The translations under genes were made by a program, and so were the position numbers. Below are positions 9,727 to 19,312 of a DNA stretch of 64,000 nt, one piece after another (the stretch's first letter is position 1; each line of letters opens with the position of its first letter). The stretch is from Pocillopora damicornis (taxonomy: Eukaryota): positions 372,001 through 436,000 of the forward strand of contig NW_020843614.1 in NCBI RefSeq assembly GCF_003704095.1, in the 5' to 3' direction. Below the pieces are notes generated by a model. It saw only the letters and a list, made by a program, of their open reading frames with translations. It did no database searches and was not told the DNA's origin.

Positions 9727-11630
9727 ATGGATAATGATAGCTCCCCGGTTTTATTTGAACGTAACATAGAGGACAACGGAACAGCAACGGAGGAATGTGC
9801 GATTGGTTCAAACCCAGTTTCACCGAATTCAAATGATTCACTGATACCTGAGAAAAAAGATCAGCAGGATTCAAAAACTGACCAGAAACCTTTGAAAAGC
9901 TCAGATGTAAGCTTGATTTTGAGTGATGATGTCAACGGAGACCCAGTTTGGCTGCAAATCGATGAAGAAACTGTATTAAAAGTCGAAGAGCATCGTGAAA
10001 TGGGATGGAAACAAGAGTTTGTCGAGAGGGTAAAGAGAGCATGCATCCTCGGTATAGGAGGAGTGATTTTCGTTCCTATTATCACTGGTGAGACACTTCT
10101 TTAAAAAAATTGTTTTTTCTTATACTTTCAAATACTAATTTAGGAATTCTTTAGTTCTTGGTCACAAACTGAAGCTAATTTGACCGACTGTCGAAAAACC
10201 AGAAGAACGAACAAAAAAGTTGCTCTATTCCGCAAATTTCAGAAGCACATTAAATTTTTTCATAACCAGAAAAATCATATACAACTTTAATCTGAAACGT
10301 GACAAATTTTACTCTAACAGCAGCTGGCGCAGTCAGCCCTCCTGTTCTCCTTGCACAAAAGTGGACGAACGGACGAGAAAAAGGTAGATACTCTACCATT
10401 GGCTTGGGCGTTTTGGTTGGGACACTATTTCTCCCGATCTTGGCACCTTGGGGTATCTACAAGCTGTTTAAACGTTTTTATACAATATTACCGAAGAAAG
10501 TTGATTATTGGATAAATCGTTGGAACGGCGATGTCACAAGCCCCCTTGGGAAACACCACTATGAAAATGGCTCAGTAGAGTTCAAAATTCCAGAAAGCAT
10601 TGTTATTAACACTGATCGGGCTCAAGTCTACAGTCCTGATCTAGGAGTTCCGAGCACAAGTCAGCTTGTGACACCTGATAGTCACATAAATGTGGATTGG
10701 TCAAATGTTAGCGACCAAGAAGATGTAAACGAAGCCCAAGTAGAACGAGTCAAGGCGTTTTTAGAGGGATTAGAATACAACATCGGGCATTTCGACAAGG
10801 TGGAAGAATATTACCGAGAATGCTGGTTGAATGAAGGACAGGAAGTTTTATCTGACGTGGAAGACGACGACGGGCGCCTTGACACTCAGCTGTTATGTGT
10901 CAGAAAAGTTGTGTCCGACACTTTTGTCAATGCAAAAACAGCTGAAGTAGATTTTAATATGTGCGAATTTGCCGCCGGCCTCTGCAGTAGTAGGTGTTTA
11001 ATTAATCAAAGACCTCATGAAGTGAGTCAAGCATCAAGAGGAAAAGATACTGATGGAACTTTAAAAGGCGGAAAATCTCCAGGCAATTTAGAAGAGAACT
11101 TTTCCGAAGCTCAGATAACAACACAAGTATCGGACAAAAGTTGTGCTCCTCTGAATGAAGATGTCGAGGGCCTTCCTGAAATGAGACCAAAAGATCAAGT
11201 ATCAGATGGCAGCGGTGCTCCCTTGTGCACTGGCACAAAGGACCTCCCTGAAAAGGGACCTAAAAAGAAGGCCAAACGAAGACGCAGAAAGCGAACTGGC
11301 GAGCAAGTGTCGACAAAAAATCACACCAGTTCTACGACAGGCGAAGATAATGACACATCGCATTCAAACCCTACGACACCGCTCTTACAGCAAGAGGACA
11401 AAGAAACAGAGAGAGCCACTGAAGTACAAGAGGACAAAGAGATAACACCTGAAAAGAAGCTTGGAAAAACTGGAAATGCAGCCCGAGAAGCCAACACTCC
11501 TTCCACAAACCAGTTGGTCACAAAAAATGAAATGTCTGAAATACTCAGAATTAACGGGCAGTTTGAACTAAAGCCGAGCGATGAACCAAAGCGCTGTCTT
11601 TACATGGCTCACTTTAATCACATTGATTAA
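9727..11630 (+). CDS. Uncharacterised protein of about 556 aa with two hydrophobic segments and a basic NLS-like tract
   Basis: Exon 1 is 9727-10087 (G|GTGAG). Exon 2 is 10321-11630, or starts at 10324 (CAGCAG acceptor). The join is in frame (PIIT-AAGAVSPP). Long open frame; no family recognised. Confidence 0.7.
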
Positions 11631-13140: not shown

Positions 13141-15024
13141 TTCCCGTCTCCCTCGGTTAGTGAAAAGGGGTTGGAAAACCTTTTCCAGCTTGGAGTCAAG
13201 CGTTTAAATAACTTGGAATTTACAAAGGGACCATTCAATATACGTGAATTTTATGAGACATACAAACAATATAAATTGACACCGTGAGATACCTATCGAT
13301 ATCTAAATTGATTTTTTAAAGAAAGATTGTTTACTTTAAAAAAAAGATACCTGATTCACATTTTTATTCTGGTCACAATTTTTTTTAAGTTGGAAGTCAC
13401 ACCTGAGAGACATTGTCTTGGTAGTGTTTTCTCTTGTATAAAATAACATGCAGGGTACAAGGCATCCACAGTCGTAAAAAAAAAATAACACCATTCATCT
13501 GCGTTCCCCTTGACTTTATAGAGCCATATTTTGGGTTAAATACAATCTAATAAAACGTAACTGATTTGCGTGATTTCGTTTGCCTGATTTCGTTATATTT
13601 CAGTGATCGATGTATATTTATGTTTGCTTAGGACATAACTATGCTCGCGCCTGCTCTGATTGGTCAAAATTTTGTCATCGTGACTCGCAAACGTTTCTTT
13701 TGTTATCATAACATTCCGCGTGACTGAACACGCTGGTTAACTTGTGGAAAGGGTGGCTCGAAGTTCAAAAATATATACATATATGTTTGTCTATTCAGGT
13801 GCTGTTTAAAATTATGGTGCGGTTAAATTTCGGTCTACATTTCATAGGAGTTTCTGGACTGAAATTTTCTTTTTACTCCAGGAACGTCCGTTTAACAAAA
13901 GATCCGCCCCTTCATTGTCAAAATAAAGAATTACAACCTCTAATCAACAACCCACTTGATTTAATTAATCTGAACCTCTCAAGGTACAGTACGGCTCCTA
14001 TGATTTACATGATGTAATATCTTGACTTCTTAAGTTGCATTTTCATCGAAGGGATTTCCTTTTCAGGTTGTTTTCATTTATAAAATACTTTTTTGATCAT
14101 GATCTATGTAAAACAAACCTGTTGGAAGCGCTTGGCCTAGATTAATACAAATAAGTCAATACATGATTTCCTTAAAAGGCGTTTAGTGTAGATTTTGAAA
14201 AGCAAAAGAAAACTTGTAACTTTGATTCAAGGTTTACTATTTTCAAAATCACTGAGTAATAGAGAGAGTACTATCTTACTTGATTCGAACATAAAACACT
14301 CAAGCACAAATTAATCACGGCCACTTGAAAAGTAATTTTTTTGAATGAGCTGCTGGGCAGAGATTACGAAAGTGTATAGAAAAGTTTATATCATGAGAGT
14401 GCAGAAAGTAAAGACTATTCATGATGAAAAAAAATAATCAGATGAGAATTATTGAACTAAAAGGACTATTTATATGAAGGCAACAAATTTCCGTAGGTGG
14501 ATTTAATTCAACAAGTACAGAGCATTAGCCAATTATATTTTAACACACCCGTTTGGCCACCTGTTAAAATGGTCAATTGGTCATCTTCTGAGAATGTCGT
14601 GCATTGGAAGGTGTCAATTGAAAAAGGTCCCTAGCATATCATTATTATGTGCTCGCGGTTTATATATTCATTCACTTGCTCGATTCTTCGCTAGAATTTA
14701 CACAAGAACAAAACACTTTTCTTGAGTGAAGGCCAATGGTAAATGCTTTCAGCAACGATTTTTCCTGAGAGATCGATTTTTTTTTCGTCGGGGCGTTGAA
14801 CTCAGAAACTGAACTTTGAGTTAAAATTGAGGTCAACAATGTTTGATACGGTGATTATTCTATGCGGGGCGTGACAAAATAAGGTCAAGGCCGCAGGCTG
14901 AGTTGTCTGACAAGAAAGTTACAGGTGTGAACGAGGTTATGTTTCGGGATTTCGCTCAGCAAGCTCTAAATGACACACATCTAAGTGAAGTATGATATGT
15001 TTACCGCGATCTAACCAGTAAGAT

Positions 15025-16341
15025 ATGGATCTGGTGTACCATGATAGCTCTCTATCACTCGTCGCTAACGAGGAGTGTGGAATAAGATCCTGCAGGCCTC
15101 CAAGAATTGAAGAATTCCCTCCTGATCTGTTCAACCAGGAGCAGAGATTTTACGGTGGAGTTACGTTTCATCTTCTAGTTTGCCTCCATATCTTTTGCGC
15201 TTTGACTGTTGTCTGCGACGACTACTTCGTGGCATCGCTGAACCGAATCACCAAATGTTTGGGTCTTAAACCAGATGTGGCCGGTGCTACCTTCATGGCT
15301 GTGGGAAGCTCCGCACCGACACTCTTTATCTCAATAATATCGACATTTTTCACAGAAGGAGACATCGGCCTCGGAACAATAGTTGGCTCGACTATATTCA
15401 ACACACTTTTCATCATAGCCTTGTGTGGTATTGGCGCTGGTTTGACGATGCGTTTGAAATGGTATCCGCTTTTTAGAGATTCTACCATGTATGTAATTAG
15501 CGTGATCATCTTGATGATTTCGATTTACGATCGGAAAGTTCATTGGTATGAAAGCGCCGCGTTTTTCATCTCATACTCTGTTTACATTATTGTGATGTAT
15601 TTCAACTCAAATATTGAGGAATGGTCCATGAAACTGAAAGATCGGATAATAAAACCCAACGCCGAAGCAGATTCTGAAGTTGATGAGAAAGGTCAAGATA
15701 CTGAAGCTGAAACTTTAGAAAATGATTCCTCCCACGAGGAAGAAAATCGTTTTAAAACACCAAAAGGATTTTTCTCAAGGATAGTTTGGATTTTCACTTT
15801 ACCTTCCATAGTTTTATTTTATATAACAATTCCAGATTGCCGTAAGAAGGAATGGCGAAAATTTTACTTGGTAACATTCACAGTTTCGGCCTTCTGGATG
15901 GGTGGGTTATCGTACATTTTAGTCTGGATGGTTTCCCTCGTGGGATTCACTTACAATATCCCAGAATGCGTCATGGGTATGACATTCCTTGCTGCGGGCA
16001 GCAGTCTCCCAGACGCCATCGCTAGCTTGGTGGTCGCTAAACAAGGAAGCGGAGATATGGCTGTATCAAATTGTATTGGCAGCAATGTTTTCGACATGTT
16101 ATGCCTTGGAATTCCATGGATGATCAAAACTACTATAATCACTCCGAGCAGTGTAGTTCACATTCAAAGCGAGAACATATTTTTTACTTCAGGGATTTTG
16201 ATAGCTAGTATCATTTGTACAGTGTTACTGATAGCTCTTAACAAATGGCGGTTAGACGAGAAACTAGGCGTTATTTTTCTTGTTATGTATTTGATTTTTC
16301 TTGGTATTGCTACATTTATCGAAGTGCTGCCTTGTTGCTGA
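15025..16341 (+). CDS. SLC24/NCKX-like K+-dependent Na+/Ca2+ exchanger, intronless CDS (paralogue A)
   Basis: EFPPDLF, VCDDYFVASL, alpha-1 DVAGATFMAVGSSAPTLF, GTIVGSTIFN, PLFRDS, TIPDCR, alpha-2 GMTFLAAGSSLPD, GDMAVSNCIGSNVFD. Confidence 0.92.
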   Translation: MDLVYHDSSLSLVANEECGIRSCRPPRIEEFPPDLFNQEQRFYGGVTFHLLVCLHIFCALTVVCDDYFVASLNRITKCLGLKPDVAGATFMAVGSSAPTLFISIISTFFTEGDIGLGTIVGSTIFNTLFIIALCGIGAGLTMRLKWYPLFRDSTMYVISVIILMISIYDRKVHWYESAAFFISYSVYIIVMYFNSNIEEWSMKLKDRIIKPNAEADSEVDEKGQDTEAETLENDSSHEEENRFKTPKGFFSRIVWIFTLPSIVLFYITIPDCRKKEWRKFYLVTFTVSAFWMGGLSYILVWMVSLVGFTYNIPECVMGMTFLAAGSSLPDAIASLVVAKQGSGDMAVSNCIGSNVFDMLCLGIPWMIKTTIITPSSVVHIQSENIFFTSGILIASIICTVLLIALNKWRLDEKLGVIFLVMYLIFLGIATFIEVLPCC

Positions 16342-16843
16342 GCACAGAAAAACGGGTTTTGAAATAACCCATGCTAGCCGTAGGTTAACAGATATGGCTC
16401 AGTGGCGGAAATCGAGAAGATTTTGATATGTGTCAATAAATCAACTGTTCATTTAGTGGCGGAGTATTCTATTATCTTTTCCTACCATGAACCCTCAACC
16501 ATGTTAACCCCTGAATACTCAGAAGGGATTCACATCTAAGGCGTATGATTTTCGCGATCTTTGGGCATTTATCGAATCATGATCACCTGCGATTTAAAGC
16601 TTTCGTCACAAATTAACGAAAACCAGGCATAACTTAGCAGCTCATTTGTTGAAAGCGATGAAAAAAACCGCAAGGCAGATTTATGTCTCTAATTCTCTTG
16701 ACTTCCCTTAAAATTGTTCGAAAGTTTAAACCACAGCTGATCGAGACTAAGGTATCAATTGTGATCCGTTGTCTTTCAAACTTTTCTTCATTTCAGGTGT
16801 AGCTTGTCCTTAGAAACAGATGACAAGATAAAACCTTACAACA

Positions 16844-18736
16844 ATGGATCGACTTCCCAGGAAACTCAGCGTCCTTCATCATATTCGTCACGTTAAACGG
16901 CACTTCTTCAACTGTAGCAGCCACAATATTATCAATGTACTGCAATATGAAACGCTGTTCTCACTGCAGCAGAGGCGAGAAGGAGCCGTTGTTATACACA
17001 CCCTGGTATGCCTGTACTGCTTTGGGGCACTAGCAGTTTTGTGTGATCATTATTTTTGCGCGTCACTTGAAAAACTATGCAAACGGTGAGTAGTATAGTT
17101 ATCTTTGGTTTTTAGAGATGAACGAAAGGGATACGTTTTTGCATGATGTGTACATTTCAGCCTTTTTACATCTTTAGATTCAGCAAGCAACTGAAATCTT
17201 TTAGGGCACACAGTGTCTGAAAACAATTGTAACTGGCTAACATCACTACACTTTTTGCTTCTAGAGTTCACAGATTAACTGTAAAAATGTCCAAAAAGTA
17301 ATAAAAAAAACTGTTTGCGTTAATTTGGGAGGTACATTTACTAAGCTTTAGAAGTCAAAAACTGATGTTTTAAACTGATGTTCAAAATACTTTTTACTCG
17401 CTTTAGACTACGTATCCCGACAGACGTTGCAGGCGCAACATTCATGGCTGCTGGTAGTTCTATGCCCACACTGTTCATCGCAATTGCTTCCGTATTCATG
17501 GGTGAGGGTGATATAGGCCTGGGTACTATTATTGGTTCAACTATGTTCAATATCCTCTTCATATCGGCCATTTGTGGGCTGTGTTCTGGTATCTCTATAG
17601 CTCTTCGGACGTGGCCGCTTTTGAGGGATTCTGTGGCATACACTATACATCTGACCGCTCTGTTAATTGTCATAGAGGATAACATAGTTCACTGGTACGA
17701 AGCCTTGGTGTTTCCATTCTTATATCTTGGTTACATAATAGTTATGTGCTTCAATAAGAAACTCGAAGGTTTGTTTGAGAGAGTTTGCGAAAAGTTTTTC
17801 CATTTACGGAAGGGATTTGAAATGGTCTCAATGGAGGACCCCCACGAAAATGCCGTTGGGAAAGGCAATGGTCAGGAAGCCCTGGAAAAATCCGGGGAAG
17901 AGGATTTAAGAAACAACGAAATTATTACCGACAAAAGCAAGAATGAAATGAAAGACACTGACTGCGGTAGAGAAGGAAGGGGAGTCAATGATCCCGATAC
18001 CTCCTCTTCTCAAGCTCATGGTTTTTCAGAAAAATCTCCGTTCGAAATTCCCAAGAGTTCTTTTCAATTAGTGATCTGGGTGATCATGTTACCTGTCCAC
18101 GCCCTTTTCTTCCTCACAATGCCCGACTGTCGCAAGAAAGGTTGGGAGAACTGGTACCCAGTCACGTTTGTAGTATCCATCCTATGGATGGCCCTCATAT
18201 CATACGTACTCGTGTGGACTGTGTCAGTCATAGGCGAGACTTTTGATATACCAGAATGCATCATGGGACTGACACTATTGGCAGCTGGTTCTAGTGTCCC
18301 GGATGCTATTGCAAGTCTTGTAGTCGCTAAACATGGAATGGGAGACATGGCTTTGGCTAATTGTGTTGGTAGCAATATCTTTGACGTCCTCTGCTTAGGT
18401 CTTCCATGGTTTTTAGCCACGACTGTTGTTCATCCGAAAAGCGTCGTTTTAATTCACAGTGGACATGTAGTTTATACATCTTTGTGCCTGTTTGGCACAG
18501 TTTTAGCAACATTATTCGTGATACACCGAAATAGTTGGAGATTGGATAAACGTTCGGGAGGTATACTATTGTTAACCTATATTGTTTTCTTATCAGCGGC
18601 TGTCATTTTAGAAGCTCTTCCCGGGGGGCCTGGAGGTCAGGGGGATGGTCCTAAATTAAGTCCACATCACCCGGGTCACCTGCCAAATAAGGGCCTAGGG
18701 CATCACAAAAATGCTCATTTAAAGAAAGTCACGTGA
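16844..18736 (+). CDS. SLC24/NCKX-like exchanger (paralogue B)
   Basis: Exons 16844-17085 and 17407-18736 (CG|A join, CKR-LRIP). Same alpha-1/alpha-2 motifs (DVAGATFMAAGSSMPTLF; GLTLLAAGSSVPD; GDMALANCVGSNIFD). An upstream acceptor tttcag ending at 16796 suggests a 5'UTR intron. Confidence 0.92.
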
Positions 18737-18774
18737 CAACCGATGGTTACTGAGTGAATTATTGCGGGCGTTTT

Positions 18775-18979
18775 TTAACCCTTTAACTCCGAAGATCTGA
18801 TTGTTAATTCTCCCCTCTAACACAATTCTTGTGAATAAGTTATGAGAATTTGGTGTTATATCAAGATAACAACTTCTTCCAACTAAGTTTGAATATTCTC
18901 ATTACCTGTTTGCTGGATAATATACAGACATTATAGGGAGAAGTTACAAGTTAATCACTTCTGGGAGTTAAAGGGTTAA
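18775..18979. mobile_element. piggyBac-like MITE (TTAA target, CCCTTT termini)
   Basis: ttaaccctttaactcc ... ggagttaaagggttaa, perfect terminal inverted repeats; about 205 bp. Confidence 0.85.
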
Positions 18980-19269
18980 AAGATTCCTCTTGGGAGGTCG
19001 ATAATCTGCTCCCGAATAGAATCTTTGCTTAGCTACAGTCATTGCACCACGGCTTAGATGCCAAAATATCAATATCAAATAAGTTGCTCGAAAAGAGTCA
19101 CTCATAAAATGCATCAACTGCTGCGAACCTCAACGGTATTATAACAGTAAAATTTACAAGAAAACTCGAAAGCACCTAGAAAAAAGAAGTACCGGTATTG
19201 TTTTGGCCAGTGGAAGGGTCTGTGTATCAACTGGAATTGAAGCAAGGCTCAGTTGGTATAACATAATCA

Positions 19270-19274
19270 ATATT

Positions 19275-19312
<38 letters not shown>

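What the first reader, a model, noticed from the sequence alone, without database searches (positions are those of the whole stretch)
15283..17476. Both tandem NCKX paralogues replace the essential alpha-1 glutamate with threonine
Seen: alpha-1 reads GSSAPTLF (ACA at 15319-15321) and GSSMPTLF (ACA at 17468-17470). Established: SLC24 proteins have GSSAPELF or GGSAPELF, and this Glu (E188 in human NCKX2) is a principal Ca2+ ligand with the alpha-2 Asp (D548). Here the alpha-2 Asp (SLPD/SVPD) and the K+-dependence Asp (GSNxFD, D575) are both retained. The same change in two diverged, intact ORFs argues against decay or sequencing error. Inference: a subfamily with altered ion selectivity or stoichiometry (for example monovalent or H+-coupled exchange), or a non-transporting role. 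This matters because such genes would be auto-annotated as calcium exporters in a probably calcifying animal.
Basis: partly seen in the sequence, partly recalled or inferred. Interest (0 to 1): 0.78.

Follow-up and report, generated by a model that had tools for sequence, protein, structure and literature searches.

The report
Threonine-for-glutamate NCKX subfamily of cnidarians
Two neighbouring, expressed coral genes belong to an old, apparently undescribed branch of the NCKX calcium-exchanger family, found in corals, anemones, hydroids and jellyfish, in which the glutamate that normally holds the calcium ion is always a threonine, so their annotation as calcium exporters is untested.

Summary
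ACA (Thr) lies at 15319-15321 in GSSAPTLF and at 17468-17470 in GSSMPTLF, where SLC24/NCKX proteins have the alpha-1 Glu (E188 of human NCKX2).

- **Both genes are real.** They are intact, transcribed (gene 2 spliced GT..AG in four polyA RNA runs) and under purifying selection (dN/dS 0.06 and 0.15-0.24).
- **The Thr is inherited, not local.** All 87 proteins of one clade carry it. Named members are hexacorals, an octocoral, hydrozoans and scyphozoans. The split from Glu-type NCKX has support 98/84.
- **Five more fixed changes accompany it.** These are T191I, G195S, A212T (GSAVFN becomes GSTxFN), an L-to-F and an I-to-M change.
- **The rest of the pocket is kept.** Every other ion-site position is at least 97% conserved, including the alpha-2 Asp and the K+-site Asp.
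- **Canonical copies coexist.** Glu-type NCKX genes are present in the same genome.
- **Range.** Among the 150 best clusters of a 1.84-billion-protein search, Thr occurs only in this clade.

Best reading: an active cation exchanger whose pocket has lost one negative charge, so its selectivity or stoichiometry is probably changed. That step is inference.

The clade also occurs in non-calcifying cnidarians, so no link to calcification is shown. No paper describing it was found.

The parts
14778..16416 (+). Gene 1 transcript, unspliced
   Evidence: One RNA contig of run X6 covers 14778-16416 without a joint. X7 reaches back to 14626.
15025..16341 (+). Gene 1 CDS, 438 aa, Thr-type NCKX (g1 type)
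   Evidence: ORF; Pfam Na_Ca_ex x2; 99% identical protein in a coral metagenome contig.
15319..15321 (+). Gene 1 Thr99 (ACA), at the place of NCKX2 E188 and NCX_Mj E54
15328..15342 (+). Gene 1 Ile102 (15328-15330) and Ser106 (15340-15342). Glu-type proteins have Thr and Gly here. The positions are i+3 and i+7 from Thr99, which would face one side if this stretch is helical.
   Evidence: Fixed in 100% of Thr-type rows, against 95-96% Thr/Gly in Glu-type rows.
15391..15393 (+). Gene 1 Thr123 (ACT) in GSTIFN. Glu-type proteins have Ala (GSAVFN). It is the residue after the ligand Ser (NCX_Mj S77).
15898..15900 (+). Gene 1 Met292. Glu-type proteins have Ile.
   Evidence: 100% against 100%.
16012..16014 (+). 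Gene 1 Asp330, the alpha-2 Asp (NCKX2 D548), retained
16093..16095 (+). Gene 1 Asp357 in GSNVFD (NCKX2 D575), retained
16844..17085 (+). Gene 2 coding exon 1 (ATG at 16844; RNA contigs start at about 16794-16806)
   Evidence: ORF; tblastn; splice joint.
17086..17406 (+). Gene 2 intron, GT..AG, 321 nt
   Evidence: The joint is present in contigs of all four RNA runs. Depth is zero at 17218-17371.
17407..18736 (+). Gene 2 coding exon 2, up to the stop codon. Thr-type NCKX (g2 type).
   Evidence: A contig of run X6 runs 17406-18801 without a further joint.
17468..17470 (+). Gene 2 Thr (ACA) in GSSMPTLF
17540..17542 (+). Gene 2 Thr in GSTMFN (Ala in Glu-type proteins)
18302..18304 (+). Gene 2 alpha-2 Asp (GSSVPDAI)
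18383..18385 (+). Gene 2 Asp of GSNIFD

Best explanation
The two genes are the anciently duplicated, still tandem members of a cnidarian SLC24/NCKX subfamily, called 'Thr-type' here. They keep the CaCA architecture and nearly all ion-ligand residues, so they most likely still work as alternating-access cation exchangers. Their central pocket has been rebuilt. The alpha-1 carboxylate (E188 of NCKX2) is replaced by a Thr hydroxyl. A second hydroxyl is added next to the ligand Ser of GSxxFN (Ala to Thr). Two positions at i+3 and i+7 from the Thr (T191I, G195S) are also changed. The pocket therefore holds two acidic side chains instead of three. This should change which cations, or how many, are bound per cycle: for example weaker or lost Ca2+ binding, loss of K+ co-transport, fewer Na+ ions, or monovalent or H+ exchange. 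Shown: the subfamily, its signature, its conservation, its expression and purifying selection. Inferred: that it transports, and that selectivity or stoichiometry differs from canonical NCKX.
For: - **Thr is fixed in the clade.** It is present in all 87 clade members and in none of 80 Glu-type hits.
- **Few, sharp differences.** Only six alignment columns separate the two types, and four of them are 100% against at least 95%.
- **The tree agrees without those columns.** With the six columns removed, the Thr/Glu split is one branch with support 98/84, and 98% of bootstrap trees need a single change. FastTree on 165 rows gives 99.
- **Wide cnidarian range.** Named members come from Oculina, Montipora, Stylophora, Nematostella, Actinia, Actinostola, Dendronephthya, Hydra, Hydractinia, Clytia, Rhopilema and Sanderia.
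- **The rest of the pocket is kept.** In gene 1 numbering, A92, S95, S96, P98, S122, N126, A323, S327, P329, D330, S353, N354 and D357 are at least 97% conserved in both types.
- **Purifying selection.** dN/dS is 0.06 for gene 1 and 0.15-0.24 for gene 2.
- **Expression.** Both genes appear in polyA RNA of three studies, and gene 2 is correctly spliced.
- **Canonical paralogues coexist.** Glu-type NCKX genes are in the same genome on contigs C3416, C2045, C472 and C3419.
- **The Glu matters in the reference protein.** In human NCKX2, E188C, D548C, S211C, S545C and S571C abolish Ca2+ transport, to under 1% of wild type (PMC12150658).
Against: There is no functional or structural datum for any member. 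A Thr hydroxyl can ligate Ca2+, and the five accompanying changes could be compensatory and restore ordinary K+-dependent Na+/Ca2+ exchange. The NCKX2 evidence is for a Cys substitution, not for Thr in this background. The positions of residues 102, 106, 123 and 292 relative to the pocket come from sequence alignment to NCX_Mj, not from a model with coordinates. Restriction to Cnidaria rests on the best 150 of 19,843 hits.
Confidence: 0.6

Rival explanations
1. Canonical function is retained. Thr-type proteins are ordinary K+-dependent Na+/Ca2+ exchangers. Ca2+ is held by the alpha-2 Asp, the Thr hydroxyls and backbone carbonyls, and the five linked substitutions compensate for the lost carboxylate.
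For: All other ligand positions and the K+-site Asp are conserved. The proteins are closest to NCKX3/4/5-like sequences. They hit the K+-dependent exchanger model TIGR00927 at E 4.6e-97, though below its cut-off.
Against: Glu is kept in 141 of the 150 best clusters. E188C is dead in NCKX2. Canonical Glu-type paralogues coexist in the same genome. No member of the clade has reverted to Glu. These points fit a separate function better than redundancy.
Confidence: 0.25
2. Non-transporting role. The proteins have lost ion exchange and act as a sensor, scaffold or regulatory partner.
For: A residue is missing whose substitution kills NCKX2 transport.
Against: Near-invariance of the remaining ligand residues and of the Gly/Pro framework of both alpha repeats across the sampled cnidarian classes, together with low dN/dS, is what a working binding pocket predicts. 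A scaffold would not need it.
Confidence: 0.07
3. Artefact or decay. The Thr is a sequencing error, a strain variant or the first step of pseudogenisation.
For: None found.
Against: The same codon is seen in independent DNA and RNA assemblies. Both ORFs are intact. Selection is purifying. Thr is present in all 87 members.
Confidence: 0.01

Closest known systems
SLC24 / NCKX K+-dependent Na+/Ca2+ exchangers (human NCKX2 as reference; nearest named hits are NCKX3/4/5-like)
   Same: Two Na_Ca_ex repeats. Alpha-2 GSSxPD Asp (D548). GSNxFD Asp (D575). The ligand positions G184 (Ser here, as in most Glu-type hits), S185, S211, N215, S545 and S571. 42-50% identity to Glu-type proteins in the identity columns.
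   Different: E188 is Thr, T191 is Ile, G195 is Ser and A212 is Thr. There is also one L-to-F change and one I-to-M change outside the repeats. The hexacoral g1 type is short (437-450 aa in most members) and has only about 45 residues before its first membrane segment.
NCX_Mj (Methanocaldococcus jannaschii exchanger; solved structures 3V5U, 5HXE and others)
   Same: A gapless alignment of alpha-1 matches S77 and N81, and the GxSxP frame is the same.
   Different: NCX_Mj has Glu in both repeats (E54, E213). Here the E54 position is Thr and the E213 position is Asp. C78 corresponds to Thr123, T57 to Ile102 and A61 to Ser106.
NCLX / SLC8B1 (CCX branch)
   Same: Same superfamily, and the best-scoring solved relative by sequence (E 2e-20). 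It is another branch with a non-Glu residue at the alpha-1 position.
   Different: NCLX keeps an acidic residue there (GNGAPD, alignment). The Thr-type has none. The tree places the Thr-type with NCKX, not with CCX.
Isolated Glu-less NCKX-like genes: Varroa jacobsoni XP_022704503 (Ala), Ptychodera flava XP_070563658 (Gly), and one copy in this genome on C3416 (Ser)
   Same: Loss of the alpha-1 Glu inside SLC24.
   Different: In the alignments made here each of these is a single cluster or a single genomic copy, and its repeat motif is otherwise degraded as well. None has the six-residue Thr-type signature or its wide conservation.

Membership tests
CaCA superfamily (Pfam PF01699 Na_Ca_ex) | Two Na_Ca_ex domains, each holding an alpha repeat | tested here: met
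   two stretches in each protein, E 1.6e-51 and 1.1e-47, against a cut-off of 24.9 bits.
SLC24 / NCKX | Sequence kinship: nearest relatives are NCKX rather than NCX, CCX or CAX | tested here: met
   TIGR00927 is the best NCBIfam model (326 bits) but lies below its full-length cut-off of 710. NCX1 and CAX models score far lower.
SLC24 / NCKX | Alpha-1 signature G(S/G)SAPE with the Ca2+-ligating Glu (E188 of NCKX2) | tested here: not met
   Thr in both genes and in all 87 clade members.
SLC24 / NCKX | Alpha-2 signature GxSxPD with Asp (D548) | tested here: met
   GSSLPDAI and GSSVPDAI. The column is at least 97% Asp.
SLC24 / NCKX | Asp of GSNxFD (D575), the residue tied to K+ dependence | tested here: met
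   GSNVFD and GSNIFD. D575 is listed as a cation-site residue in PMC12150658. Its role in K+ dependence is from my own knowledge of the NCKX2 mutagenesis literature.
SLC24 / NCKX | K+-dependent Na+/Ca2+ exchange activity (4Na : 1Ca + 1K) | not testable with these tools
   Needs flux or current measurements.
Thr-type subfamily (defined here) | Signature T99, I102, S106, T123, (F180), M292 together with D330 and D357, and placement inside the clade | tested here: met
   Gene 1 and gene 2 both read TISTFMDD at these columns. Clade support is 98/84 with these columns removed.

The most novel reading that the evidence does not exclude
The Thr-type proteins are a cnidarian invention. They would be a CaCA exchanger that no longer carries Ca2+ with canonical NCKX stoichiometry and instead moves other cations: monovalent ions or H+, or Ca2+ without K+. 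They would serve a cnidarian-specific task. One speculative example is cation loading or unloading of the cnidocyst capsule. This task is untested here. The only support is that the clade was found only among cnidarians, that calcifying and non-calcifying species alike have it, and that it lacks the alpha-1 carboxylate.
Probability: 0.35. Interest if true: 0.78.

Novelty: new variant of a known kind. Interest (0 to 1): 0.6.

Why it matters
The alpha-1 glutamate is treated as indispensable in NCKX and NCX exchangers. Here evolution has removed it and held the replacement, plus five linked changes, fixed across the sampled cnidarian classes, while the rest of the pocket stayed intact. This is a ready-made natural experiment on how the charge and hydroxyl content of the CaCA pocket set ion selectivity and stoichiometry. 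It names a small set of residues to swap in both directions between a Thr-type protein and human NCKX2. In practice, cnidarian genomes label these genes 'sodium/potassium/calcium exchanger 3/4/5(-like)'. Studies of coral calcification or of phototransduction that count NCKX genes may therefore include transporters that do not export Ca2+. One public Stylophora model even fuses the two genes into a single 946-aa protein.

Tried and rejected
- **Decay or error:** rejected.
- **Two independent substitutions:** rejected; the Thr is ancestral to both genes.
- **Link to calcification or symbiosis:** not supported, since the clade is present in non-calcifying species.
- **Solved NCKX structure to map the residues:** none was found in the PDB copy. 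The best hits are NCLX, NCX1 and NCX_Mj.
- **Literature:** seven searches and five papers opened found no description of a Thr-type NCKX. Supplementary tables of two Hydractinia papers were not held, so no cell-type expression could be obtained.
- **ESM Atlas:** returned only generic Na_Ca_ex clusters and no taxonomic limit.
- **Earlier scan notes:** nothing on these genes.
- **Rfam on the high-depth stretch 18600-19300:** no match.
- **Steps not run:** no structure was predicted, because the tools return no coordinates and residue distances could not have been measured. The third word-index protein search was not spent. The joined (spliced) gene 2 protein was not searched or aligned. Its exons were used separately by reference.
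- **Unresolved:** the organisms of P0208 and P0215 could not be named. The label 'Porites' that I gave P0018 in the trees is unsafe, because its cluster also lists a g2-type Porites lutea protein.
Full report
**What is in the sequence.**
- Gene 1 is a single ORF at 15025-16341 (+), 438 aa.
- Gene 2 has a first coding exon at 16844-17085 and a second at 17407-18736.
- RNA contigs of four polyA runs from three studies all carry the joint 17085|17407 (GT..AG, 321 nt skipped).
- Those contigs cover gene 1 without any joint, from 14778 to 16416.
- They leave most of the intergenic stretch and the intron empty, so both genes are transcribed as modelled.
- Each protein has two Pfam Na_Ca_ex domains.
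- Codon 15319-15321 is ACA in GSSAPTLF, and codon 17468-17470 is ACA in GSSMPTLF.
- The alpha-2 Asp (GSSLPDAI, GSSVPDAI) and the Asp of GSNVFD/GSNIFD are present.
- No variant at either Thr codon appears in the RNA contigs.
- The two proteins are 45% identical.
- The joined protein was not built or searched.

**Residue mapping.**
- A gapless phmmer alignment to NCX_Mj puts gene 1 Thr99 on E54, Ile102 on T57, Ser106 on A61, Ser122 on S77, Thr123 on C78 and Asn126 on N81.
- In human NCKX2 numbering these positions are E188, T191, G195, S211, A212 and N215.
- PMC12150658 lists E188, S185, S211, A541, T544, S545, P547 and D575 as cation-site residues.
- The same paper reports that E188C, D548C, S211C, S545C, S571C and G184C have less than 1% of wild-type Ca2+ transport.
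- It works from homology models. No NCKX chain was found in the PDB copy.

**It is a subfamily, not a local oddity.** Two word-index searches returned 167 proteins.
- 87 of them read GSSxPT(L/M)(F/C) together with GSTxFN.
- 80 read G(S/G)SxPE together with GSAVFN.
- On a 165-row alignment only six columns separate the two groups, as follows.

| Gene 1 position | Thr-type | Share in Thr-type | Glu-type | Share in Glu-type |
|---|---|---|---|---|
| 99 | T | 100% | E | 100% |
| 102 | I | 100% | T | 95% |
| 106 | S | 100% | G | 96% |
| 123 | T | 100% | A | 99% |
| 180 | F | 86% | L | 91% |
| 292 | M | 100% | I | 100% |

- All other ion-site positions are at least 97% identical in both groups. These are A92, S95, S96, P98, S122, N126, A323, S327, P329, D330, S353, N354 and D357.
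- FastTree puts all Thr-type rows on one side of one branch, with support 99.
- A careful IQ-TREE run on 48 rows, with the six columns removed, gives the same split at 98/84. In it, 98% of bootstrap trees need a single change.

**Who has it.** The named members fall into three groups.
- g1 type: Oculina patagonica, Nematostella vectensis and Actinostola.
- Medusozoan group, sister to the g1 type: Hydra vulgaris, Hydractinia symbiolongicarpus, Clytia hemisphaerica, Rhopilema esculentum and Sanderia malayensis.
- g2 type: Stylophora pistillata, Montipora foliosa and M. capricornis, Actinia tenebrosa, and the octocoral Dendronephthya gigantea.

If the root lies among the Glu-type proteins (Glu is the state found in 141 of the 150 best clusters), the Thr-type ancestor and the g1/g2 duplication predate the split of Anthozoa and Medusozoa.

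The tandem order g1 then g2 on one strand is kept in another hexacoral contig (L003). In Stylophora the public model PFX19496.1 (946 aa) is simply g1 fused to g2.

**Range outside Cnidaria.** A full HMMER scan of 1.84 billion representatives found 19,843 hits at E-value up to 0.001. Among the best 150 clusters:
- 141 have Glu.
- Six have Thr. Four are the cnidarian clusters above. Two are unnamed transcriptome contigs, P0208 and P0215, which sit on long branches as sister to the medusozoan group.
- One has Ala (Varroa) and one has Gly (Ptychodera). Both have otherwise degraded motifs.
- One is a fragment.

No Thr-type protein was therefore seen outside the clade. Hits below about 277 bits were not inspected.

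**Selection and the genomic background.**
- dN/dS is 0.06 for gene 1 against an Oculina-like orthologue, though dS of about 1.1-1.3 is near saturation.
- It is 0.16 for gene 1 against the 99%-identical Tara coral-metagenome copy (L001), probably the same species.
- It is 0.15-0.24 for gene 2 against a Stylophora-like orthologue (dS 0.23-0.31).
- It is 0.08-0.09 for gene 2 against L003.
- The same genome (234 Mb, 4393 contigs) also holds Glu-type NCKX genes on C3416, C2045, C472 and C3419, and an NCX on C2022.
- The Thr-type genes are therefore additional to the canonical ones, not replacements.

**The organism.** It is a pocilloporid coral by similarity. Gene 2 is 90% identical to the Stylophora protein, and gene 1 is 99% identical to a Tara coral-metagenome contig. 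The assembly size and contig number match what I recall for the published Pocillopora damicornis assembly. That is memory, not a test.

**How it most likely works.**
- Shown: the framework of a CaCA exchanger and 11 of the 12 positions equivalent to the NCX_Mj ligand set are conserved under strong constraint. The list of 12 ligands is from my knowledge of the NCX_Mj structure papers.
- Shown: the pocket lacks one of its three carboxylates and has gained hydroxyls at 99, 123 and 106 while losing one at 102.
- Positions 99, 102 and 106 are spaced i, i+3 and i+7, so they would face one side if this stretch is helical.
- Inferred: the protein still binds and exchanges cations, with a pocket charge of -2 rather than -3. 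This should alter Ca2+ affinity, K+ co-transport or the number of Na+ ions, or shift it towards monovalent or H+ exchange.
- I put 0.6 on 'active exchanger with changed selectivity or stoichiometry'.
- I put 0.25 on 'ordinary NCKX activity through compensation'.
- I put 0.07 on 'no transport'.
- I put about 0.01 on 'artefact'.

**Comparison with the known, and novelty.**
- By kinship these are SLC24 proteins.
- By the family's own alpha-1 signature they fail one defining feature, so the label 'K+-dependent Na+/Ca2+ exchanger' is not justified without an assay.
- Seven literature searches found no description of this clade. The library does not cover most subscription journals, so prior mention cannot be excluded.
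- I class it as a new variant of a known kind.

Noticed in passing
window 18775-18979: A roughly 205-bp MITE lies about 40 nt after the gene 2 stop codon, apparently inside its 3' UTR. It has perfect 18-nt inverted arms. Read by eye, these resolve into CCCTTTAACTCC / GGAGTTAAAGGG ends flanked by TTAA on both sides, a piggyBac-like hallmark. The genome search gave 4951 first-look candidates, and the scored copies are 84-88% identical. The element explains the very high RNA contig depth at 18758-19065. Rfam gives no match.
   Followed up: partly
L005-L007 (G000:C3416:3060-18144): Three tandem NCKX genes, each a single uninterrupted reading frame, belong to the cnidarian Glu-type clade. The middle copy (L006) reads GGSVPSLFTS, GSGIFN and GSSGPDVT, so it has Ser in place of the alpha-1 Glu. 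This is an independent and apparently more recent loss of the Glu, without the Thr-type signature.
   Followed up: partly
P0358 (Stylophora pistillata PFX19496.1): This public 946-aa model, named 'Sodium/potassium/calcium exchanger 5', contains both GSSAPTLF...GSNVFD and GSSMPTLF...GSNIFD. It is the g1 and g2 genes fused into one protein, probably an annotation error.
   Followed up: partly
P0250 (Varroa jacobsoni), P0272 (Ptychodera flava): These are lone NCKX-like proteins with Ala or Gly at the alpha-1 Glu position and otherwise degraded repeats.
   Followed up: no
L023 (SRR10257944), L024 (SRR31175926): Two fast-evolving Thr-type proteins, P0208 and P0215, come from unnamed transcriptome runs and are sister to the medusozoan group. 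They might come from parasitic or otherwise divergent cnidarians. The organism was not identified.
   Followed up: partly
window 9727-11630: Two ORFs of 125 and 443 aa lie upstream of gene 1. They are also called, in the same order, on the Tara metagenome contig. They had no Pfam hit on record and were not studied.
   Followed up: no
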